A DNA stretch of 64,000 nucleotides, taken from positions 711,264,001 through 711,328,000 of the forward strand of contig NW_027362763.1 in assembly GCF_046119375.1 (NCBI RefSeq), read 5' to 3'. The notes below the pieces were generated by a model. That model ran no database searches, was not told where the DNA came from, and saw only the letters and a program-made list of their open reading frames with translations. The stretch is from Phyllobates terribilis. Lineage: Eukaryota. Positions 8,030 to 57,102 of this stretch are shown piece by piece. The translations under genes and the position numbers were made by a program. Positions within the stretch are counted from its first letter, which is position 1; each line of letters begins with the position of its first letter.

Positions 8030-9391
8030 GTAGGCGGCTCTTTAAATCAACATCATTGTTTCAGAATCCAAGAGGAGACAACAATCGGGGTTATACAAAT
8101 ACTGGTCTGTTCTTCTTAACCAGCCACATAAATACACATACATTTACAAGTACACAAAAATAATAGTGTGTTTCTCCTGGATTTACAAATCTAAATGTCT
8201 GGCTTATTACGATTATAGGCTGTATTGTCACACCACACAAATATGTAGTGGAGCTACAGGTAGAAAAGGAGGAAAAGATAAAACTTTTTCCTGGAGTGAT
8301 GCGTTAAACGGGCTGTCCACCTTAGGCTACAAGTCTGCAGTCACTCTATGTGACTGTAGACTTGTGAATCCTCACAAAACGCGCACTGGGCACTGTGAGG
8401 ATTCGTTGGTGCCGGGAGCCGTGGTAGCATGACGAATAGTGATGAGCGAGCATGCTCGCTGCTGCTCGGTGCTCTCCCGAGCATCTCACTGCTCGAGATG
8501 TTCGGCGCTCGCTGAGTATTTCCGGGGTTGCTCGGTGGGAGCTCGGGTCCCCTCCCTGCATGTTTGGCGCTCTTTAGAGCGCCAATCAACATGCAGGGAT
8601 TTCCTGTAATTGTAATGCCGCAGCCATGATGGTTGTGGCATTACAGTGATTGGCTGGCCGCACAGCGTCATCAGGTCTATATCAGACCTGGCGCCGCTGT
8701 GCTCGTCACAGTCACTCTGGAATCAGGCAGAGTAGGGAGAGGTGCTGCTGCATCAGGGAGAGATTTGCTTGTGTATTAGGTAGTGTAGGGAGAAAAAACG
8801 TACATTACACATATCCATCTTAACAAACAGTCCTTTTGAGGACTAACTAATCCATCTGCAGAGATATCAGGCAGGCAGTGTATATAGGCAGGCAGGGTAT
8901 ATAGCAGACTGCAGTGCATATAGCACAAGAGGCTCCATTCCAATTCTGCCTTCTGCTGCTGTTAGATATTTCTATACAAAGGCACAGGTCTCAGGGGCCA
9001 GGAATACTTTTTTTTGGATCTTAATCCTCATTATTTGCTTAAAAAGCAATCCAGAGAACACTGTTTTTCTGCGCCACTTGCTTGTTGGCACTGCAGAATA
9101 CAGCCAGGTCCTTTCCATATTACAGCACTAGAAATCCAGCTATTTAAAACTGTGTTTTCTCCGTCAAACGGATCGCATATACGTTGTCAGAAAATACTGC
9201 CATTTCTGGCCTCCATTAAAAATTTCCTTTAGTGTGTCAGTGAAGCAATTCACCGCAGTTTGCTGTTCAAACTACTTACCTACAGGCCAGGTATTTAAAA
9301 CTCTGTTTTCTCCGTCACACGGATCACATATAAGTTCGCTCCAAACTCAGTCATTTGTAGTGAGCGTGGGAGATACTGTCCTCCATTTAAA

Positions 9392-12300
9392 ATGGGCAAG
9401 GCACGTGGCAAGGGAAGGGGAACTGAACTTGATGGTGCATGCAGAGGCCGAGGACAAGGCCGTGGACAAGCTAAAATTGTGCCACAACAAACACCCACAT
9501 CTTCTCGCCTGACCTTCCTGTCCCAATTCCTAGGGGACCAAAGCACAACACTTTTGAACCCCGAGCAGTGTCAAAAGGTTGTTGGTTGGATAGCGGATAA
9601 TGCTTCCAGTCACTTAGCCACCACCACCACCACCCTGTCTTCCACACGGTCGAGTCTCAGTAGCCGTGAGTCTGGACCGCATATTCCTCACCCTGATCCT
9701 CCTTCCTCCCACCATACCAAGTGCCCGGAGACAACTGATCCCACACTTGGACACTCTGAAGAGCTGTTCACTTTTCCATTTATAGATTCAGGCCTCTCGC
9801 CCGGTCCACTTGAAGCGGGGCAAGAGGAGATCGCGTATAGCGATGCCCAAATATTTGAGCAGCCATGGTCACACGAAGGCGACGGTGGGAAAGTGTCACA
9901 AGAGGTGGACGATGATGAGACACAATTGCCAGAAATCAGGAGGAGGATGAGGGTGCGGAAGTGGAAGATGAGGTGGTGTTTGATATAGTAACTGACCCAA
10001 CCTGGCAGGAGGACATGCAGAGCGAGGACAGCAGCACACAGGGGGAGGGAGGCAGAGCACCCCAACAGGCAGGAAGAAGCAGTGTGGCGGCCGCAGACAG
10101 AAGGCAGGCAACCGTTCCCCGTAAGACCAACACGAAGGAAGTTGCCAGTACAACTGTTAGGTCTTCCCGAGTCTGGTTGTTTTTTAAAGACTCTGCCGAT
10201 AACCCCAAAAAGGTCATTTGCACCACCTGCCAGGCCAGCATCAGCAGGTGTGGCAAAATGACCAGCCTGACCACCACCAGCATGATCAGGCACATGGCAG
10301 CAAAGCATCCGACTTTGTGGGCTGAACCCCAGGGTCCAGGGACAGTGTCTGCAGGTGGCACCATTGCTTCTTCCGCTGTAGTGCATGCAAGCCAATCCCC
10401 TGTCCATGGTGCATGCGAAGATGCCTCCTGCCCTGCACCTGTCGTTGCACACTCTCAAGTAGCAGCATCAGGAAGCACGTCCAGTTGTCCATACCCCAGT
10501 CCTTGGAATGCAAGCGCAAATGTGTAGCCAATGCCCCACAGGCCACACTACTAAATTCTCTCATTTCACGACTACTTGCGCTCGAAATGTTGCCTTTTAG
10601 GTTTGTGGAGACGGAAGCATTCCGCAACCTGATGGCGGCGGCCGTCCCTCGGTACTCGGTCCCCAGTCGCCACTATTTCTACTGGTGTGCCGTCCCCGCA
10701 TTACACAAGCACGTGTCCCAAAACATTAGCCGTGCCCTCAACAACGCAGTTACTGGGGAAGTTCACCTAACCGTGGACACGTGGACAAGTGCTTGTGGGC
10801 AGGGATGGTACATCTCGCTGATGGCACACTGGGTTAACATAGTGGAAGCCGGGACCCAGTTGGACCTTGGGACGGAGCACGTCCTCCCGATGCCAAGGAT
10901 TGCGGGCCCTAGGTCAATCAGGGTTGCCCCCACGGTCTACAGCTCCTGCACCTCATCCTCCTCAGCCTGCTCTTCAGCCTCCATCTCCGAAATGACCACA
11001 TCAGTCACAAGCTGGAAGCAGTGCAACACTGCCTCGGCCAAGCGGCAACAGGCTGTGCTGAAGCTAATATGCTTAGGTGAAAAAACGCACAATGCTGAAG
11101 AGTTGTGGACAGCTCTGAAAGAGCAGGCAGATCTGTGGCTCACACCGCTGAACCTACAGCCAGGCATGGTCATGTGTGACAATGGCCGGAACCTGGTGGT
11201 GGCTCTGAGGCGAGGCGAGCTCACACACATACCATACCAGGCCCGTGTGCTTAACCTCGTGGTTCAGCAGTTTCTCAAATCCTACCCGGAGCTGCCGGAT
11301 CTGCTTGTTAAAGTACGCCGCCTGTGTGCCCATTTTGGAGAGTCAGCTACAGCTTCTGCCACCCTTGCCGAGTTTCAGCAGCATTTGCAGCTTCTGGCTC
11401 ACAGACTGGTGTGTGATGTCCCCATGCGTTGGAACTCTACACTGCAGATGTTGGGAAGCATTTATGAGTAGAAGAGGGCAGTTGTTGAGTATCAGCATCA
11501 ACAAGGCCGTTGGTATTCAGTTCAGACTCCACACATAAGACCTCAGGAGTGGACATGGATGTCAGACATATGTACCATCCTCCAAAACTTTGAGGACTCC
11601 ACCAAGATGGTGAGCGGCGATGATGCCATAATTAGCGTCACCATCATCTTCTCTGTCTTCTGAAACGCTCTCTGCTCACAATCAAAGAGGATGCATTGCA
11701 GGCGGAGCATGATGAGATGGAGCAAGGAACCATACAGGGTGATTACACACAGCCAAGCCTCATCTCATCCCAATGTGGATTGGGTGACAATGAGGAAGAG
11801 GAGGAGGAGGAAGGACAGGAGCTAGTTTCATGCACTATAGACGGTACTACCTGCACAGCTGTCATACCGTCTGTTCAGCATGGATGGCCAGAGGACAGAG
11901 AGGAGGAGGAGGAGAAGAGCATGGTCAGTCATCCTCTTGGTGAGGACACGAAAGTCTTGCCTGTTAGCAGTCTGGCACGCATGGCTGAGTTTATGTTATG
12001 CTGCCTTTCCCATGACCCTCGCATTCTTAAAATTTTGGGTGACAGTCATTACTGGTTGATGACACTTCTAGACCCACGTTACAAGGAGAACTTTATATCT
12101 CTTATTCCTGAGGCGGACAGGTCTACAAAAATAGGGCTGTACCAGAAAGCCCTTGTTGCGAAACTATTAAAAAAATTCCCGTCTGAAAATGCTGGCGGCA
12201 GAGGGCACACTTCGTTGGATAACCAAGGAGTACAGGCAAGAGAGACACAACTTCAATCCAGCAGAGGCAGGGGAGCACTGTCAAAGTTCTGGGATAGTTT

Positions 12301-12674
12301 TCTCACACCCTCCCATCGCACAGGCCCTGAGGCGCGGGGTACTCTCAAAAGGAGTGCAAAGTTTGTGAAGATGCTGAGGGAGTTCCATTGCCGACCGTAC
12401 CTACATCCTCCGTGATTCCGCTATGCCTTATAATTATTGGGTATCCAAGCTGGATACGTGGAGTGAACTGGCTCTCTATGCCTTGGAGGTCCTGGCCTAC
12501 CCTGCCGCCAGCATTTTATCAGAGCGGGTTTTTAGTGCCGTTGGTGGAATTATAACTGATAAGAGCATCCGCCTGTCAACTGAAAATGCTGACAGGCTGG
12601 CTCTTCTAAAAATGAACAAGGGCTGGATTGGGCCAGACTTCTCAACACCACCGAATGATAGCAGCGTAACATAA
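9392..12674 (+). pseudogene. hAT transposase pseudogene (BED zinc finger, DDE, C-terminal dimerisation domain) with several frameshifts and stops
   Basis: Consecutive ORF pieces give VWLFF..VICTTC..MIRHMAAKH (BED), VHLTVDTW, MCDNGRNL, CDVPMRWNST, LLDPRYK and ASILSERVFS, collinear with the intact ORF at 53401-57102. Confidence 0.95.
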
Positions 12675-12984
12675 ACTCAAATCCAGTGTCTTTTCTTGGG
12701 AGGTGTATTCCCATGCACCTTTTCACACCCACACATGGGTATACGCTTCCTGATTTTGGCTATTTGCTCTTGTCCTCCTCCTTCTCCTCATCCTCCACCA
12801 CCATATCACCAGGGTGACCGTGGTCCGTGATGCAACACCCACATAATTTTTTTAAAGGGTGTTTATGATGCCCATAAAAAATTTTTTTTATACAGTATGT
12901 TCATGTATACCCCCCAGGGGTAAATGTTTGTCAGCCCATACACTTAGTACATGGGCATTACAAGTATAGGAGGCCCGCTCCTAT

Positions 12985-13560
12985 CTAATGGGAACATTTT
13001 TTTATGAGGCCCTCCTCCACGTCTCTTCCAAGGGTCATTGAATTGCCTCCAAATTTTTGGCAGCCCTTGCATTCACTGCATAGGCCAACACTATGGGAGA
13101 CTCGTTCCTTTCTAATCGGAATTTGTCGTTACTGTGGCCCTGCTCTGTGTGTCTTTAATTTCTAAGTGGGTTTTTTCCTAAATTTGGTCAGCCGTTGGAC
13201 TCACTGCATACCCTATAACTGTATAGCAGACTCTCTCCTTTCTAATGGGAATTTGTCGTTACTGTGGCCCTGCTCTATGTGTCTTTAATTTCTAAGTGGG
13301 TTTTTTCCTAAATTTGGTCAGCCGTTGGACTCACTGCATACCCTATAACTGTATAGCAGACTCTCTCCTTTCTAATGGGAACATGTCCTACTCGTTACTG
13401 TGGCCATGCTCTATGTGTCTTTAATTTCTTAGTGGGTTTTTTCCTAAATTTGGTCAGCCGTTGGGCTCACTGCATACCCTATAACTGTATAGCAGACTCT
13501 CTCTTTACTAATGGGAACATGTTGTACTCGTTACTGTGGCCATGCTCTATGTGTCTTTCA
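12985..13560. repeat. Subterminal tandem repeat of hAT-1, about 130 bp unit, 4-5 copies
   Basis: AATTTGGTCAGCCGTTGG recurs at 13181, 13311 and 13447. Confidence 0.85.
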
Positions 13561-13759
13561 GAGTCCCTCCATCATCAATGAAACAGGATGTGTCTGATGA
13601 TGTGTCACACACCACATTGCCAGAAAAGGTTGTAAAATGTTAAAATGACATTTCCCGGTGAATGCATTTGCTTTAAAAAATAATGCAAAAAAAAAAAACA
13701 GTAGGATCTTTCTTTAGTATAAAAACAGAGTCGCCAATGTAACCTCAATTTAATCACAT

Positions 13760-14010
13760 TGTTCAGCTCCTGCACCTCCTCCTCCATATCCGAAATAACC
13801 ACATCAGTCACAAGCTGAAAGCACTGCAGCACTGCCTTGGCCAAGCGGCAACAGGCTGTGCTGAAGATATCATGCTTAATGCTTAGGTGACAAACGGCCC
13901 AGTGCTGCAGAGTTGTTGAAAGCTGTAACACAGCAGCTTGATCTGTGACTCTCACCGCTGAACATACAGCCAGGCATGGTCATGTGTGACAATGGGTGGA
14001 ACCTGATGAC
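13760..14010 (+). repeat. Direct-orientation duplicate of a hAT-1 transposase segment (about 10940-11200)
   Basis: CAGCTCCTGCACCTC...ACCACATCAGTCACAAGCTG...GGCCAAGCGGCAACAGGCTGTGCTGAAG...CAGCCAGGCATGGTCATGTGTGACAATGG occurs in both places. Confidence 0.9.
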
Positions 14011-14355
14011 GGAGAAATGACAGCCGGAGTAGATACGGTTTCCCTCTATGCCAGTCCTTTCACATAGATAAAGAATATGGCTGTGGTGAAATACAACTCC
14101 CACTGAGAAGCTGTTTCAGATTGAAAAACATTGGGCCCACCAGAGGATTTGATTCTGAGGGCTCACCTTTCTACCCCGCTCAAGAGCCCCATAGCAGCTG
14201 CAAAGTTAGCGCTATCATGAACTCTCCTGATGTAGAAGCCAGGGCACACCAGAGGATTCTCTGGTGGGACCGTCCAACCCTGCCGAAAAGCAGTCCTAGC
14301 TAAGAAAAGTGTGTGGGAAGGTTCCCGGACACTCTATGGCCGCTTTTTTTTACTG

Positions 14356-14483
14356 AGGTGGAAACCCATGCAAACACGGGGAGAACATACAAAATCCTTG
14401 TAGATGTTGTCCTTGCTGGTATTTGAACCCAGGATCCCAGCGCTGCAAGGCTTCAGTGCTAACCACTAATCCAATGTGCTGCC
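14356..14483 (-). mobile_element. tRNA-derived SINE 5' portion (V-SINE-like)
   Basis: Minus strand reads GGCAGCACATTGGATTAGTGGTTAGCACTG...GGGTTCAAATACC...TTTGTATGTTCTCCCCGTGTTTGCATGGGTTTCC: pol III A/B boxes plus a V-domain-like motif, recognised from memory of V-SINE consensus. Confidence 0.75.
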
Positions 14484-14744
14484 GTTCACCCTCTGATATC
14501 TAACAGGCTGGAGAAACTTGCACCTACTGCCACTCTATCTTCAGCTCCTTTGTGAGAAACTAATGTATTTGGGCAGCCACTCAGTCTACCAAATAAAATT
14601 CCTGAGAAGGAAATTGGGGAAGGCTTCGCTACTGGTACTGGGGGAAGTGCTAATACCATGGCGTCGTACCATAGTTTACTGAAAATATTCCAGGCTGGTA
14701 GGAGGCAAGCAGATTCTCACAGAAAAGTACCAGCAGTAATGTTC

Positions 14745-16172
14745 ATGGACCCACGCTTGTAGAAGGCGGAGACAACATCGGAAGAAATAGTGGCGGCTAG
14801 GGAACTTGTATGGACACGAGGCATGAGGTTGTGAAAAGCTTCCACCTGCACGAGCCTAAAAGGCCACATTTCAAGTGAAAACAACTTTAGAGGACTTCCT
14901 GGGAAAAATCACAGCTGGAGTAGATATGGTTTCCCAAGTCCTTTCACCAAGCTAAAGAATATGGCTGTGGTGAAATACAACTCAGCAATAAAAACTGTGG
15001 ACTGGCTCCGTACCGTCCCTGGCTGCATTCACCTGTCCACGTGTTTGTGGTTAGGCGGTCCTTCCCAGTAAGTGCACTGGGGAGGGCACGGGTAATGTTG
15101 TGGGACCCATGCTTGTGGAAGGCGGAAACGACACCGGGAGAAACAGTGGCGGCTGGGGACCGAGTATGGACACCCGGCCGCTGCCGGCATGAGGTTATAA
15201 AAAGCTTCCGCCTCCACGAGTCTAAAAGGCCACATTTCAAGTGAAAGCAGCTTTAGAGGACTTCCTGGGAGAAATGATAGCTGGGTAGATATGGTTTCCC
15301 AAGTTCTTTCACCAAGCTAAAGAATATGGCTGTGGTGAAATACAACTCAGCAAAAAAAAAGCTGTGGACTGGCTCCGTACCGTCCCTGGCCACATTCACC
15401 TGTCCACGTGTTTGTGGTTAGGCGGTCCTTCCCAGTAAGTCCACTGGGGAGGGCATGGGTAATGTTATGGACCCGTGCTTATGGAAGGCGGAGACAACAC
15501 TGGGAGAAACAGTGGCGGCTGGGGACCGAGTATGGACACTGGACCGCTGCCGGCATGAGGTTATGAAAAGCTTCCACCTCCATGAGCCTAAAAGGCCACA
15601 TTTCAAGTGAAAGCAGCTTTAGAGGACTTCCTGGGAGAAATGACAGCTGGGTAGATATGATTTCCCAAGTCCTTTCACCAAGCTAAAGAATATGGCTGTG
15701 GTGAAATGCAACTCAGCAAAAAAAGCTGTGGACCTGCTCCGTACCGTCCCTGGCCACATTCACCTGTCCACGTGTTTGTGGTTAGGTGGTCCTTCCCAGT
15801 AAATGCACTGGGGAGGGCAAGGGTAATATTGTGGGACCAGTGCTTGTGGAAGGCGGAGACGACACCAGAAGAAACAGTGGCGGCTGGGGACCTAGTATGA
15901 ACACCCGGCCACCGCCGGCATGAGGTTATGAAAAGCTTCCCCCTCCACGAGCCTAAAAGGCCACATTTCAAGTGAAAGCAGCTGTCAAAAATTTGGCAGT
16001 ATAGTATTGCAGCCTGTGGGTTGGTGGGTGGCTGGCTGCATGCTTGTGCTTGTATTCCATGGAATGGGGTAGGGACAATTGAACGCTGCACTGGGACAAG
16101 GTCGGTGATTGTTGCAAGTCTGCAATGACAGGTGCATGGCAGGAGGCATCTTCGCATGCGCCAAGGATCACT
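14745..16172 (-). repeat. Tandem array (365-bp period, about 3.5 copies) of antisense copies of the hAT-1 transposase segment at about 10400-10820
   Basis: CTTTCACCAAGCTAAAGAATATGG recurs near 14941, 15306 and 15671. The reverse complement contains GAAATGTGGCCTTTTAGG, TCCCCAGCCGCCACTGTTTCT, CACCTAACC..ACACGTGGACA and GCATGCGAAGATGCCTCCTGCC, matching the sense ORF. Confidence 0.92.
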
Positions 16173-17074
16173 TATTATGCGCACACTATTAGGTAGTGAC
16201 CTGGGAGTCAGAGATGCTTCCAGAGGTCTTCCCCATGCTGTTCCCACGTCTTATTAGCACTGTATGCATGTGTCTGATGATGTGTCACACACCACATGGC
16301 CAGATAAGGTTGTAAAATGTTAAAATTACATTTCCTGGTGAATGCATTTATCTTGGTTGAAAGCAATGCAAAAGTGCAAAAACGCATCAAAAACGCTATG
16401 TGTGAACATAGCCCAAGGTGTAGAGGAGTATTTTTGTTTTCGGTTATTTATTTTGCCTTATCTACAAGTCATTACCCAGGAAAGGATGTTCCTTAACATA
16501 TTTCCCAGGAAAATCCATTTTGGTTTCGTTTTGGTATGTTTTATTGTGAGTCCGTAAAAGTGGCGTAATACCTCTCACAACGTTGTTGATAGCAGTGATC
16601 TGGGAGTCATAGATGCTTCCTGGGGTCTTCCCCGTGCTGTTCCCATGTCATTTGAGCACTGTTCCCATCAATTTGGGCAATTTTTAGGCCCTCTGCAGAC
16701 CGCCGGGGGGAGCCGCCTGAAAAATGCTCGAGTTTCCCATAGACTTACATTGGGCTCGTTGCTCAGGTCGAGCACCCGAGTATTCCAATGTGCTCGACCC
16801 GAGCAATGAGTACCCGAGCACTTTAGTGCTAGCTCATCACTAATGACGACAAATATGTGATTTGCATAAATGCGGTCACATGCTGACTAGACATATCCAG
16901 CGTCGCTCTATGCAAGTGTATTGAGTTTGACCAGACCAGTCGGTATGTGACCGCATATATGCAAATCACATACTTGAGGTCACGTGCTGGCTGCCCTCGC
17001 AGTGCATGCAATATGACTTGTGAAGTCTGCAGTCACATAGAGTGACTACAGACTTGCAGTCTAAGGCCGGACAT

Positions 17075-17578
17075 CATTCATATAATAAGAAAAAAAGTTT
17101 AAAGCTTCGTATATCTCATCCCCTCTTGTGTGGTACTGCCTGATGAGCCATGTATCTAACCCTCTCCTGTGTGATACTCTCTGCTGAGCTGTGTATCTAA
17201 TCCTTTTCTGTGTGATACTGTTTGCTGAGCTGTGAATTTCTGAAATGACACTCATATATTAGCGTCAATAGTCTATTGCTTAATATTATTGCTGCAATTT
17301 GGTATTATGAAGGTACAAATATACCAATGTTGTATATCTACTTGTGTCTGTTATATTCTATGTTTCTCTAATTATTCCACACCTGTGTAGTTTCTGCCAT
17401 TTCATGATTGGTCAGCACTTGTTTAAAATATTTTGCCATGGTTTTGTTTGCTATCCTCAGTGATCAAGGGCAGTTCATGCCTCAAACGCGTCTGAGCGTT
17501 ACTCCATCTACCACCATAAATTTTAATTCTACGTCTTAAAGATTTTATCTAGATGCCAACACTTGATTTTTTTCTTCA
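17075..17578 (+). mobile_element. Probable Penelope-like 3' fragment with a degenerate hammerhead motif
   Basis: Flanked by the near-duplicate TAAGGCCGGACA / TAAGGCTGGACA. Contains CTCA-GTGATCA-AGGGCA-GTTCA-TGCCT-CAAA-CGCGTC-TGAG at 17456-17496. Family assignment is inference. Confidence 0.4.
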
Positions 17579-53062: not shown

Positions 53063-53400
53063 TCGAAAAGTTTGGGGGATCTAAGAGTGTGGCAACCCAG
53101 TAGTCATGATTACTTCGAATTCTGACAATATGAGGGTCATGCTGCAGGTAGTGCAGCAAGAAGGCACTTATGTGCCTTGCGCATCTCGGAGCCCCAAAAT
53201 TATTTTCCGGGCTAGATGCAGCTAAAAATTATTTTTAATTTTAAATCTGGTGAAGCTTTAGTATAGATGGCCTAATAGGATCAGTGCTGCACACTGCTAC
53301 AAAGCCCAAATTATTTTCCAGTCAAGATACAGATAAACATGATTAGTAATTTGAAAGCTTAAAACGGTTGGTAGGGTGATTTTAACCAATCATCAAGCTT

Positions 53401-56400
53401 TTAATCTCCCCAGGATGACACAGGGGTAGAAAAGTCGTTTCGGATCCATGATTTGTTCATCTTTATGAACGTGAGTCTGTCTACATTATCAGTGGAGAGC
53501 CGCGTGCGCTTATCTGTCAGCACACCACCAGCAGCGCTGAACACACGTTCAGACAGAACGCTGGCTGCGGGGCATGACAAGATCTCCAAGGCGTAAGTGG
53601 CTAGCTCCGGCCATTTATCCAGATTGGAAGCCCAAAAAGAGCAAGGGTCCAGTGACACAGTCGTGGCTTCAATGTTTACTTGGAGATACTCCTGTACCAT
53701 CGTCTCTAGGCGTTGACTATGTGTCAGACTTCTTGTCTCCTGTGGCCTTGCAAAGGATGGGCTAAAAAAGTGGTGAAATGATTCCGCAAAATTGATGTTA
53801 CCAGCAGATACTGTGGTTCTGTTACGGTTTGAGTGCTGAACACTTGATGGTCCCACGGTTTTCAAGTTGGAACTGTGAGATTCACTACGTGCACCACTGG
53901 TATTTTGTGGAAAAGCACATGTAAGATTCTGCAACAGTCTCTGCTGATACTCCTGCATGCGTGCATCCCTTTCTATGGCAGGAATAATTTCTGCAAATTT
54001 ACTTTTGTACCGGGGATCTAACAGTGTGGCAACCCAGTAGTCAGGATTATTTCTAATTCTCACAATTCGAGGGTCATGTTGCAGGTAGTGCAGCAAGAAG
54101 GCACTCATGTGTGTTGCGCATCCAGGAGCACCAAGTCCCTGTTGTGTTGGTGGCGAGGTAACAATCATGCTTCCTTCCTCTGTCCTCTCCCCCCAACCTC
54201 GCACAACAGAAATGTGATCAAGGTCTCCCTCATCTGATGAGTCTTCCATCAGTTCGTCCTCCACTTCTTCCTGGGCTCCTGCACCTTCCTCACTAGTTTG
54301 GCTGCTACCATGCGCCCTGGTAAAACCATCTCCCCCACCCTCACATGCCTGCCGCCTTGGTGCTGCCGACCGTCTGGACCTTGCAGATGTTAGCCCTTCC
54401 GCATACAACTCCTCCTCCTCTACTTCCTCCACCTCCTCTTGTGCCACCACCTGACTCCGAATTCTGTTTAACATGTGCTCCAGCATGTAAATCACCGGAA
54501 TAGTCATGCTGATAATGGCATCGTCAGCACTAAACATCTTCGTCGCCATTTCAAAACTGTGCAGAAGGGTGCATAGGTCCCTGATCTGAGACCACTCCTC
54601 CAGCGTGATTTGCCCCACCTCTGAATCTCGTTGGCCCAGGCTATACGTCAGAACGTATTGCACCAGGGCTTGTCGGTGCTGCCACAGTCGCTGCAACATG
54701 TGCAGAGTTGAATTCCACCGGGTAGGCACATCGCATTTTAGCCGGTGAAGTGGCAGGCCCAACGACTTCTGTAGAGATGTAAGTCGCTGAGCTGCGGGAT
54801 GCGAACGGCGGAAGTGAGCACACAGCGACCGTGCCCTCTGCAGAAGGCCATCTAGTCTGGGATAGTGGGCTAAAAATTGCTGGACAACCAGGTTCAACAC
54901 GTGAGCCATACAAGGCACGTGTGTGACATTGCCCCGGCGAAGGGCCGCACCCAGGTTTGCAGCATTGTCGCACACGGCCTTCCCTGGTTTCAGGTCCAGT
55001 GGAGACAACCATTCATGAAATTGGTTCTCCAGAGCTGACCACAACTCCTCAGCTGTGTGACTCACATTTCCCAGACATTTCAATGTAAAAACCGCCTGAT
55101 GACGTTGAGCCCTACTGCCAGCATAGTAAGGAGGTGTGCAGGATCCCTTCTGCGCAGTTAGAAAGCTTGTGGCATGACCAGACAGGCTTTGGGTGCAGGT
55201 GGAAGACCGAGAGGAGGTTGAGGAGGCAGAAGCAGTGGAGGAACTTTGACATAAAGAGGATTGACGCACAACTCGTGGGGACGGCAAGACTTGGACAGCA
55301 GCCCCTTGTCCTGCTGTCACCATAGTTACCCAGTGCCCAGTCAGCGACATGTAACGCCCCTGTCCATGCCTACTCGTCCAAGTGTCTGTGGTGAAATGCA
55401 CCCTGTCACACACAGAGTTTCTCAAAGAAGCGGTGATGTTGTGTGCGACATGCTGGTGGAGCGCAGGCACACCTTTCTTTGAGAAGTAGTGCCGACTGGG
55501 CATCTGGTACTGGGGCACTGCGACGGACATAAGGTCTCGAAAATCCTCTGTGTCCACCAGGCGGAAAGGCAGCATTTCTGTAGCCAAGAGCTTGCAGATG
55601 GTGAAATTCAACCTCTTAGCTTTCTCATGGCTAGGAGGAAATGGTCTTTTACTTGTCCACATCTGAGGGACCGAGGGCTGGCTATTGTGCTTAGACGGGG
55701 TTGATAAGGGTGTCCCCGGCAAACTGCCGGTCTGTGAGGAAGATGCAGGCGGACATGTTAGGTTGCCTTGATCCAAAGGTGGTGCTATCGATGTCGGACA
55801 GCGCTCAACACCAGCTGGTGTTACCACCTCCAAAGAAAATGATGACCTGCCAATCACGCTGGCTGTTGCGGGTAAAGAGGTGGCAGGTTTGCGCCCCAAA
55901 ACAGGTGTGACTGCTGTCCCCCCAGTCACAGAGGATGAAGAGGCCGCGGATGCACAAGATATGGCAGACGGTGATTGGCCCGGCCGGCTAGGCCGCATTG
56001 TAGCACACTGAGCTTCCCACTGCAACTTATGCTTCATGTCCATGTGCCGGTTCATGCATGAAGTACTCAAACTATGTATTTTTTGGCCTCTACTTAGCTT
56101 TTGCTGACAAATGTTACAGATAACACGAGTTGGGTCATCTTTATCGATCTGAAAAAATGCCCAGGCTATGCAAGGCTTAGCACCCATGCGACCTGAAGAG
56201 CCACCACGACTTGTGGTGAGAGGCAGAGTTGTGTTTGAGGATGCAGTTGTTGACGTGCTTCCAGTACTACGTCTCTGTCCAGGAAGGCGCAACCTGACCT
56301 CGTCGTCACTAGCATCTTCCTCCACCTCCTCTGCTGACCTCATCTCTTGGCTGACTGTGGGTTGACAGTAAGTGGGATCTCCGACCTCATCATCATCACC

Positions 56401-57102
56401 CTGTGCGTTATCACACCCGTCGTCCTCAGAGCCAACCTGTTCCTGCCCTGACAAAAAACTAAAGTTGTCGCTCCAATCAGGTATTTGAGTCTTATCATCG
56501 TCTTCCTCATTGTCTCCACCAACAGGAGTTACAGTTTGGGAATGAGGGTCTACATTATGGTCAGAACCTTCTGCGTCTGGTCCTGGATCCGACTCATAAA
56601 GATTCTGGGCATCAGTGCAGATCATTTCCTCGTCTGGATTCACAGAAGCGCTGGAGTCGACCTCTGATTCCCAGGCTATAGTATGAGTAAACAGCTCTGC
56701 AGACTCAACCATCTGTTCTACCTCATACTCAGACGGGCAGCTGGAGATTTGGGAGCTGTGAGGAAGCAAGTGCGATTTGGGTGACACCTTTGAGGACTGG
56801 AGTATTTGTGATGTTGAAGTTGATGTGGAGGAGAGCCCACTTAAAGGAGCACTTGATATCCGTTGAAGCACCTGCTGTTTTTGTGCCTCATCTGGAATTT
56901 GTAGCGATTGGCGTGGCCGTAAGAAAGGGATCTTATCACATTGTCCGCTAAAAGAAGTAGACATTTTAGTTTGGCTGGAAGATGGTCTTTCTTCTGCAGA
57001 TGTTACTGTTGCTTTAACACGTACCCCACGGACACAACCTTTTTTCCCCTTCCCAACAAGCCTATTCCCCTTTCCACCAGCAGCAGGCCTTTTTCCACTC
57101 AT
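53401..57102 (-). CDS. Intact hAT transposase, 1233 aa (BED zinc finger, DDE catalytic domain, C-terminal dimerisation domain; ZBED1/4-like family)
   Basis: Uninterrupted ORF with AWAFF..VICNICQQ..MNRHMDMKH, VHFTTDTW, AVCDNAANL, CMAHVLNL, DVPTRWNST, LLDPRYK and WPELATYALEILSCPAASVLSERVFS. It lies between TIRs with a TSD, so it is a transposon gene rather than a domesticated one. Confidence 0.96.
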   Translation of the reverse strand: MSGKRPAAGGKGNRLVGKGKKGCVRGVRVKATVTSAEERPSSSQTKMSTSFSGQCDKIPFLRPRQSLQIPDEAQKQQVLQRISSAPLSGLSSTSTSTSQILQSSKVSPKSHLLPHSSQISSCPSEYEVEQMVESAELFTHTIAWESEVDSSASVNPDEEMICTDAQNLYESDPGPDAEGSDHNVDPHSQTVTPVGGDNEEDDDKTQIPDWSDNFSFLSGQEQVGSEDDGCDNAQGDDDEVGDPTYCQPTVSQEMRSAEEVEEDASDDEVRLRLPGQRRSTGSTSTTASSNTTLPLTTSRGGSSGRMGAKPCIAWAFFQIDKDDPTRVICNICQQKLSRGQKIHSLSTSCMNRHMDMKHKLQWEAQCATMRPSRPGQSPSAISCASAASSSSVTGGTAVTPVLGRKPATSLPATASVIGRSSFSLEVVTPAGVERCPTSIAPPLDQGNLTCPPASSSQTGSLPGTPLSTPSKHNSQPSVPQMWTSKRPFPPSHEKAKRLNFTICKLLATEMLPFRLVDTEDFRDLMSVAVPQYQMPSRHYFSKKGVPALHQHVAHNITASLRNSVCDRVHFTTDTWTSRHGQGRYMSLTGHWVTMVTAGQGAAVQVLPSPRVVRQSSLCQSSSTASASSTSSRSSTCTQSLSGHATSFLTAQKGSCTPPYYAGSRAQRHQAVFTLKCLGNVSHTAEELWSALENQFHEWLSPLDLKPGKAVCDNAANLGAALRRGNVTHVPCMAHVLNLVVQQFLAHYPRLDGLLQRARSLCAHFRRSHPAAQRLTSLQKSLGLPLHRLKCDVPTRWNSTLHMLQRLWQHRQALVQYVLTYSLGQRDSEVGQITLEEWSQIRDLCTLLHSFEMATKMFSADDAIISMTIPVIYMLEHMLNRIRSQVVAQEEVEEVEEEELYAEGLTSARSRRSAAPRRQACEGGGDGFTRAHGSSQTSEEGAGAQEEVEDELMEDSSDEGDLDHISVVRGWGERTEEGSMIVTSPPTQQGLGAPGCATHMSAFLLHYLQHDPRIVRIRNNPDYWVATLLDPRYKSKFAEIIPAIERDARMQEYQQRLLQNLTCAFPQNTSGARSESHSSNLKTVGPSSVQHSNRNRTTVSAGNINFAESFHHFFSPSFARPQETRSLTHSQRLETMVQEYLQVNIEATTVSLDPCSFWASNLDKWPELATYALEILSCPAASVLSERVFSAAGGVLTDKRTRLSTDNVDRLTFIKMNKSWIRNDFSTPVSSWGD

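What the first reader, a model, noticed from the sequence alone, without database searches (positions are those of the whole stretch)
14745..16172. hAT-1 contains a tandem array of antisense copies of its own transposase
Seen: about 3.5 units of 365 bp, each with roughly 250 bp that is the reverse complement of the transposase region at about 10560-10820. The last copy extends to match from about 10400. All lie inside the TIRs, 2-3.5 kb downstream of the stop. Known: inverted duplications such as maize Mu killer silence their family through hairpin-derived siRNA. Inference: read-through from the transposase promoter would fold back on the region between the BED finger and the first catalytic Asp, giving a built-in self-attenuating module. 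The copies look diverged from the sense ORF, which suggests an old and possibly family-wide feature.
Basis: partly seen in the sequence, partly recalled or inferred. Interest (0 to 1): 0.7.

Follow-up and report, generated by a model that had tools for sequence, protein, structure and literature searches.

The report
Frog hAT transposon carries backward self-copies
A dead 8.4-kb cut-and-paste (hAT) transposon of a poison-frog genome really does carry, behind its enzyme gene, a small tandem array of backward-facing copies of one piece of that gene, but the copies are old, worn down at a neutral rate and now too unlike the gene to look like a working self-silencing device.

Summary
Inside a complete hAT element (8437-16842; 16-bp TIRs, 8-bp TSD) lies a 366-bp tandem array of about 3.4 units (14736-15983, last copy to 16167). 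Each unit holds about 240 bp antisense to transposase codons at 10572-10811 (about 75% identity). The last copy reaches 10403.

All units share the same indels against the sense gene, so one inverted fragment arose first and was amplified later. Differences fall almost evenly on the three codon positions. The homologous part is no better kept than the spacer.

The sense gene has 4 frameshifts and only 1-2 stops. That rules out 11% neutral decay per arm in place (P about 1e-5). The fragment therefore predates this copy's death: it was inherited or acquired already diverged.

Only 2 of 1417 21-mers are perfectly complementary to the gene. An AATAAA sits 144 bp before the array.

This scan has already noted and followed up the same layout on other DNA of this genome. 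Those notes read it as family-wide and passively carried.

My verdict is an inherited, neutrally decaying rearrangement relic. Self-silencing is unproven and unlikely today.

The parts
8437..16842 (+). Complete hAT element 'hAT-1' (8,406 bp)
   Evidence: The 16-nt TIR TAGTGATGAGCGAGCA occurs only at 8437-8452 (+) and 16827-16842 (-, 1 mismatch) in the window. The flanking 8-bp duplication is ATGACGAA (8429-8436) / ATGACGAC (16843-16850). GCTCG/CGAGC motifs are concentrated in the terminal 200 bp, 14 of 20.
9392..12674 (+). Transposase gene, broken: 4 frameshifts (about 9935, 10390, 11660, 12400) and an in-frame stop at 11469-11471
   Evidence: ORFs. Pfam zf-BED (E 7e-7) in 9961-10527 and the hAT C-terminal dimerisation domain (E 4e-7) in 12423-12674. 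It is colinear with frog hAT/ZBED4-like proteins and with the intact hAT-2 protein of the same window. A profile gives a weak match to Hermes transposase around its second catalytic Asp (E 0.005).
10403..10811 (+). Sense segment of the transposase gene that is represented backwards in the array
   Evidence: Inverted-repeat pairs I1-I9 and I12; BLAST; alignment A1.
14736..16167 (-). Tandem array of antisense transposase fragments: unit 1 (partial) 14736-15091, unit 2 15092-15457, unit 3 15458-15822, unit 4 15823-16167. Unit 4 runs on into the homologue of 10571-10403 instead of the spacer.
   Evidence: The minus-strand translation keeps recognisable transposase peptides, with stops and frameshifts.
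15251..15376 (+). Spacer 'X' of a unit, not transposase-derived. It is also at 14887-15009 and 15617-15740, with an older solo copy at 14011-14114.
   Evidence: Direct-repeat families D8 and D18; BLAST 14011-14099 vs 14902-14983, 15268-15348 and 15634-15714 at 82-83%; no match to the CDS even at word size 7.
13769..14008 (+). Second self-scrap, in sense orientation: a copy of 10966-11198 (84%). It has stops and ends at the C-D-N-G motif that aligns to Hermes D248.
12922..13558 (.). Separate tandem array of about 130-136-bp units in the tail, just after the stop codon
   Evidence: TRF gives 13098-13558, period 136, 3.5 copies, 93%. BLAST extends it to 12922.
13588..13690 (+). Segment 'Y', duplicated directly at 16268-16373 (89%). 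It brackets the block holding the sense scrap and the array.
   Evidence: (D13).
14592..14597 (+). First canonical AATAAA after the transposase stop, 144 bp before the array. A second one lies at 14987 inside unit 1.

Best explanation
The array is an inherited structural relic that is carried passively. Step 1 (inferred): in an ancestor of this hAT lineage, one aberrant repair or transposition event placed a fragment of at least 409 bp of the transposase gene (homologue of 10403-10811) backwards into the dispensable 3' tail. The same tail also holds a forward scrap of the gene. Step 2 (shown by structure): a 366-bp block, made of 240 bp of that fragment plus a 125-bp spacer, was later multiplied head-to-tail by slippage or unequal exchange into about 3.4 units. 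Step 3 (shown): the copies have since drifted like non-coding DNA and are now 23-27% different from the gene. Step 4 (shown for timing): the fragment already existed and had already diverged before this copy's transposase gene began to decay. It therefore travelled with a coding-competent element or was picked up already diverged. hAT transposition needs only the ends and transposase, so such a tail is simply copied along. If one transcript ever spans both arms, it can form a long imperfect duplex and might feed small-RNA pathways as a by-product. Nothing indicates that this was selected for or is effective today.
For: One origin followed by amplification: all four units share a 3-nt insertion, a 2-nt deletion and many substitutions against the sense gene. 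The units differ from each other by only 7-12%.

Neutral decay: sense-versus-unit differences by codon position are 14:18:21, 15:20:23 and 15:15:25, and 14:19:14 in the extra 170 nt. The minus-strand reading has stops and frameshifts.

No constraint on the pairing part: among units 1-3 the homologous part differs by 7.1-11.7% and the spacer by 4.8-6.5%.

Older than this copy: 3,207 coding nt hold 1-2 stops. P(at most 1 stop) is 0.046 at 4% neutral decay, 7e-4 at 8% and 1e-5 at 11.5%.

The array keeps residues found in Engystomops and Eleutherodactylus homologues (K, S, L, S-R, K, T, R) where this element's own gene has changed. It shares none of this gene's private changes consistently: one apparent exception in unit 4, the W of F-W-C, is explicable by a C-to-T change at a CpG (CGG to TGG).

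The tail is a mosaic of scraps and arrays. The unrelated hAT-2 in the same window also has a self-scrap in its tail, but no antisense array.

Poor present-day targeting: the longest perfect complementary run is 22 nt. Only 2 of 1417 21-mers are perfect, no 26-mer is, and the median is 6 mismatches per 21-mer. That 22-nt run and the 88% stretch at 10403-10458 are within chance for 73% identity (P 0.10 and 0.22).

Earlier notes of this scan on other DNA of the genome reach the same reading. These are leads only.
Against: I could not look at any other copy of the family, at any transcript or at any small RNA, so absence of function is inferred from sequence decay only. A 409-nt duplex with 321 intermolecular pairs and a gain of -225 kcal/mol (shuffled control -21 +/- 6) is predicted if both arms are on one RNA. 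piRNA-type targeting tolerates mismatches: 150 of 1417 21-mers have 3 or fewer mismatches. The relevant targets would be active family members, which I did not see. The fragment must once have been a perfect inverted repeat inside a lineage that nevertheless, by earlier unchecked notes, became very abundant. That is at least curious. The lesion-based clock assumes uniform rates.
Confidence: 0.62

Rival explanations
1. This is the first reader's idea: a built-in self-attenuating module. Read-through transcripts fold back on the transposase mRNA segment. The hairpin is processed into small RNAs that damp the family's own activity, and this has been kept by selection on the element or the host.
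For: The inverted layout lies inside one possible transcription unit. A strong imperfect duplex is predicted. The feature was carried before this copy died and, by earlier unchecked notes, is present in many copies. Known precedents exist in which inverted transposase duplications silence a family: Mu killer (PMC3440606) and Ac composite insertions (bioRxiv 10.1101/2020.01.07.897926).
Against: Complementarity is only 73-77% with indels, the decay pattern is neutral, and the pairing part is no better conserved than the spacer. Almost no 21-mer is perfectly complementary to the gene. An AATAAA lies just upstream of the array. There are no expression or small-RNA data.
Confidence: 0.12
2. This is a private accident of this copy. 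The fragment was captured from a different, already diverged or dead hAT relative, for example by template switching during gap repair at this locus. It was amplified here and is absent from other family members.
For: The array carries ancestral-type residues rather than this element's own derived ones. The small tree leaves its placement open, on a long branch of 0.34. No second copy of the family is in the window. Units 2-4 are similar enough (7-9%) that their amplification could be near the time of this copy's death.
Against: There are no TIRs or neighbouring gene parts of a nested element around the array. The fragment shares dendrobatid-type states with this gene and P0001, namely C in A-C-G-Q-G and T-G in V-T-G. 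Earlier notes of the scan report the same layout in several other copies (not verified by me, family identity not checked).
Confidence: 0.1
3. The minus strand of the array encodes a second protein: a truncated transposase-like inhibitor or other gene.
For: There are minus-strand ORFs of 98 aa (14944-15240) and 190 aa (15675-16247), with recognisable transposase-like peptides.
Against: Every unit needs frameshifts or stops to be read as transposase. Pfam finds nothing. The 190-aa ORF has no relative among 5.8 billion proteins at E of 0.01 or better. Codon positions show no constraint.
Confidence: 0.02
4. This is an assembly artefact: the array or its orientation is a mis-join of reads from different hAT copies.
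Against: Units differ by 7-12%, so they are individually distinguishable. Junctions recur in register across units. The element has matching ends and a TSD.
Confidence: 0.03

Closest known systems
Mu killer (maize MuDR) and the Ac/Ds composite insertions made by alternative transposition (hAT)
   Same: All are partial inverted duplications of a transposase gene that can pair with the sense transcript. The Ac case is in the same superfamily and arises from aberrant transposition (PMC3440606; bioRxiv 10.1101/2020.01.07.897926).
   Different: Those are separate, recent, near-perfect inverted duplications at one locus. They are transcribed from a flanking or Ac promoter and are shown to give dsRNA, siRNAs and heritable silencing. 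Here the inverted piece sits inside the element between its own ends and is only 73-77% complementary. It is repeated in tandem, was inherited with the element, and has no expression data.
Transposon-borne tandem arrays (for example the Tetris foldback element of Drosophila virilis, whose internal repeats seeded a satellite; PMC4079207)
   Same: It is a head-to-tail array of a few hundred bp carried inside a DNA transposon and spread with it. This same element has a second array with a 136-bp period, and another hAT family of this genome is noted to carry a 110-bp array (unchecked).
   Different: Here two thirds of the unit is an inverted piece of the element's own coding sequence. No free-standing satellite derived from it has been shown.
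Internally rearranged or 'fractured' hAT derivatives and junk-filled tails (for example hAT-2 of this window)
   Different: hAT-2 carries only a same-strand scrap and no antisense array.

Membership tests
hAT superfamily transposon | 8-bp target-site duplication | tested here: met
   ATGACGAA / ATGACGAC flank the ends, 7 of 8 matched.
hAT superfamily transposon | Short terminal inverted repeats starting YARNG | tested here: met
   TAGTGATGAGCGAGCA at both ends, 15/16 matched, and found nowhere else in the window.
hAT superfamily transposon | Transposase with BED zinc finger and hAT C-terminal dimerisation domain | tested here: met
   PF02892 E 7.3e-7 and PF05699 E 3.9e-7, both above the curated cut-offs.
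hAT superfamily transposon | RNase-H-like DDE core related to Hermes | tested here: inconclusive
   The profile of 9 homologues hits Hermes transposase only weakly (E 0.005, 19 bits). The alignment runs over the second catalytic Asp and the RWNST motif. A single sequence found nothing.
Hairpin-type transposon silencer (Mu killer / Ac composite insertion kind) | Inverted duplication of transposase sequence | tested here: met
Hairpin-type transposon silencer (Mu killer / Ac composite insertion kind) | Arms similar enough to yield small RNAs that match the target | tested here: not met
   Against this copy's gene, complementarity is 73-77%. Only 2 of 1417 21-mers and no 26-mer are perfect, and the median is 6 mismatches per 21-mer. 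Matches to other, active family members were not testable.
Hairpin-type transposon silencer (Mu killer / Ac composite insertion kind) | Both arms on one transcript (dsRNA detected) | not testable with these tools
Only an in-silico duplex and the position of AATAAA are available.
Hairpin-type transposon silencer (Mu killer / Ac composite insertion kind) | Small RNAs from the duplicated segment and reduced transposase expression or heritable silencing | not testable with these tools
   No small-RNA or genetic data were reachable.
Transposon-borne minisatellite | Head-to-tail units in register inside the element's ends | tested here: met
   Period 366, 3.2-3.4 copies, 90-92% identity.
Transposon-borne minisatellite | Array present in independent insertions of the family | not testable with these tools
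Metagenome scans for two array-specific words found nothing. There are only indirect dating and unchecked earlier notes.

The most novel reading that the evidence does not exclude
An abundant autonomous hAT lineage of poison frogs has carried a backward piece of its own transposase gene in its 3' tail for a long time. Its own transcripts would then supply antisense precursors (hairpin siRNAs, or phased piRNAs made from the mRNA tail) that throttle the family. This would be a transposon-encoded brake that let the family persist and multiply in a giant genome.
Probability: 0.1. Interest if true: 0.7.

Novelty: new variant of a known kind. Interest (0 to 1): 0.3.

Why it matters
Inverted duplications of transposase genes are the best documented way in which a DNA transposon family first gets recognised and silenced. 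Those cases are accidental, locus-specific rearrangements. A family that carries such a duplication inside every copy would bear on whether transposons can carry their own brake, and on why it did not stop the family from spreading in a very large frog genome. As the evidence stands, the feature is better read as a useful lineage marker. It is also an example of how hAT tails collect and amplify scraps. The gene-versus-scrap comparison gives a simple internal clock for the element.

Tried and rejected
- **Sequencing runs.** No test of read-through, small RNAs, copy number or assembly was possible.
- **Protein search.** The word search with the 190-aa minus-strand ORF of the last unit aimed to catch predicted proteins from other array copies. 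It found none at E of 0.01 or better.
- **Metagenome scans.** Two array-specific words (20 and 23 nt) gave 0 matches.
- **Rfam.** Nothing was found on 8300-17100.
- **tRNA scan.** Nothing was found in the tail.
- **Tree.** An ML tree of the 83-aa segment, meant to place the array among homologues, was unresolved except for the array clade itself.
- **PDB.** A single-sequence search found nothing.
- **Origin of spacer X.** Sensitive BLAST found no source for it in the element's own gene. The protein-level extension into it is not homologous.
- **Rejected readings.** A second gene on the minus strand, a simple nested inverted hAT copy, and a feature general to hAT elements (hAT-2 lacks it).

Full report
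**What is there**

The window comes from a poison-frog-type genome. The closest proteins are from Phyllobates terribilis and Ranitomeya imitator. Earlier notes of the scan say the same.

Positions 8437-16842 are a complete hAT transposon.
- The 16-nt terminal inverted repeat TAGTGATGAGCGAGCA occurs only at the two ends.
- It is flanked by the 8-bp duplication ATGACGAA/ATGACGAC.
- GCTCG/CGAGC motifs cluster in the last 200 bp at each end.

The transposase gene runs from about 9392 to 12674 on the + strand. It has a BED finger and the hAT C-terminal dimerisation domain. It is colinear with frog hAT proteins and with the intact 1,233-aa transposase of the second hAT of the window. It is broken by four frameshifts and an in-frame stop at 11469.

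**Check of the observation**

Tandem Repeats Finder reports a 366-bp period, 3.2 copies and 92% matches at 14820-15983. Self-BLAST extends the array to 14736-15983.

Each unit has about 240 bp that is the reverse complement of 10572-10811 at 75%. The last copy continues to 10403 (429 nt, 72.7%, E 6e-63).

The remaining 125 bp or so of each unit is a spacer with no match in the gene. An older solo copy of the spacer sits at 14011-14114. It lies directly after a second self-scrap, which is in sense orientation (13769-14008, a copy of 10966-11198 at 84%).

The tail also holds a 136-bp array (12922-13558) and two pairs of direct duplicates: 13588-13690/16268-16373 and 16195-16263/16594-16662. The tail is a patchwork.

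**History read from the sequence**

- **One origin.** In alignment A1 all units share a 3-nt insertion, a 2-nt deletion and many substitutions against the sense gene. There was therefore one ancestral inverted fragment of at least 409 bp. A block of fragment plus spacer was multiplied later.
- **Unit ages.** Units 2-4 differ by 7-9% and unit 1 by about 11-12% from units 2-3.
- **Codon positions.** Differences between the sense gene and the units are 14:18:21, 15:20:23 and 15:15:25, and 14:19:14 in the extra part of the last copy. This is close to even, as expected if most change happened in non-coding DNA.
- **No protection of the pairing part.** Among units 1-3 the gene-derived part differs by 7.1-11.7% and the spacer by 4.8-6.5%.

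**Age relative to this copy**

The 3,207 coding nucleotides contain one or two stops. With 3.8% of substitutions creating a stop, P(at most 1 stop) is 0.046 at 4% neutral decay, 7e-4 at 8% and 1e-5 at 11.5%.

If the 23-27% sense/antisense difference had arisen here after a duplication in this dead copy, each arm would need about 11-13%. That is excluded. The fragment, and the 16%-diverged sense scrap, therefore predate the decay of this copy's gene.

At protein level the array keeps residues found in Engystomops and Eleutherodactylus homologues where this element's gene has changed. It shares none of this gene's private changes consistently: one apparent exception in unit 4, the W of F-W-C, is explicable by a C-to-T change at a CpG (CGG to TGG). 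A tree of the 83-aa segment cannot place it more precisely.

Two histories fit. The fragment may have been carried for a long time by a coding-competent lineage. Alternatively it was taken from an already diverged relative.

Earlier notes of this scan, on other pieces of the same genome, describe the same layout in several hAT copies. Their follow-ups call it family-wide and passively carried. I treat these as leads. I did not verify them, and I did not show that they concern the same family.

**Could it work as a silencer?**

If one RNA carried both arms, a long imperfect duplex is predicted. It has 321 of 409 positions paired between the arms and a gain of -225 kcal/mol, against -21 +/- 6 for shuffled partners. 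The longest uninterrupted helix is 26 bp.

Present-day complementarity is poor:
- The longest perfect run is 22 nt.
- 2 of 1417 21-mers and no 26-mer are perfect.
- 150 of 1417 21-mers have 3 or fewer mismatches.
- The 22-nt run and the better-matching stretch at 10403-10458 are within chance for 73% identity.

The first canonical AATAAA after the stop is at 14592, 144 bp before the array. This is weak evidence only. Rfam has no match. The minus-strand ORFs are not a gene. The other hAT in the window has no antisense array, so this is not a general hAT feature.

**Comparison with known systems**

The layout resembles the inverted transposase duplications that silence MuDR (Mu killer, PMC3440606) and Ac (composite insertions from alternative transposition, bioRxiv 10.1101/2020.01.07.897926).

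It differs in several ways. It lies inside the element, is inherited with it, is tandemly repeated and is strongly diverged. It fails the one defining feature I could test, namely arms similar enough to give matching small RNAs.

It also resembles transposon-borne tandem arrays such as those of Tetris (PMC4079207). hAT elements make up about 3.9% of a related poison-frog assembly (PMC11152451).

**Verdict**

The self-attenuating function is unproven and, on present sequence, unlikely.

The best reading is an inherited, neutrally decaying rearrangement relic amplified into a minisatellite (confidence about 0.6). Interest is modest, and the novelty class is a new variant of known kinds. The scan has found this before on other DNA of this genome.

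Noticed in passing
window 8320-8363 and 17023-17066; also 16844-16888/16938-16982: The hAT sits between two 44-nt arms that are 91% complementary, and each arm is itself a palindrome. A separate 45-nt hairpin lies just outside the right end. The hAT may have inserted into a small palindrome-ended element.
   Followed up: no
window 12922-13558: A second tandem array (130-136-bp units, 93-96% alike) lies directly after the transposase stop codon. It is unrelated to the 366-bp array.
   Followed up: partly
window 13769-14008: A sense-orientation scrap of the transposase gene (copy of 10966-11198, 84%, with stops) ends at the C-D-N-G motif that aligns to Hermes D248. It is joined there to the same spacer that recurs in every array unit.
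   Followed up: partly
window 14330-14490: This stretch looks, from memory only, like the tail of a tRNA-derived SINE common in lower vertebrates. ARAGORN finds no tRNA, and there is no other copy in the window.
   Followed up: partly
window 53076-53207: The second hAT (transposase 53401-57102, minus strand) has a same-strand scrap of its own gene (aa 987-1030, 77%) just downstream of the stop, but no antisense copies.
   Followed up: partly
window 17112-17234: A 41-bp tandem repeat of 3 copies lies in the flank to the right of the element.
   Followed up: no
window 15010-15860 (minus-strand reading): In units 2-4 (unit 1 lacks this part) the Asp of the L-T-x-D-T-W-T motif reads Asn (L-T-T-N-T-W-T). 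I take this Asp to be the first catalytic Asp from general knowledge. The change was made before the amplification of units 2-4.
   Followed up: partly
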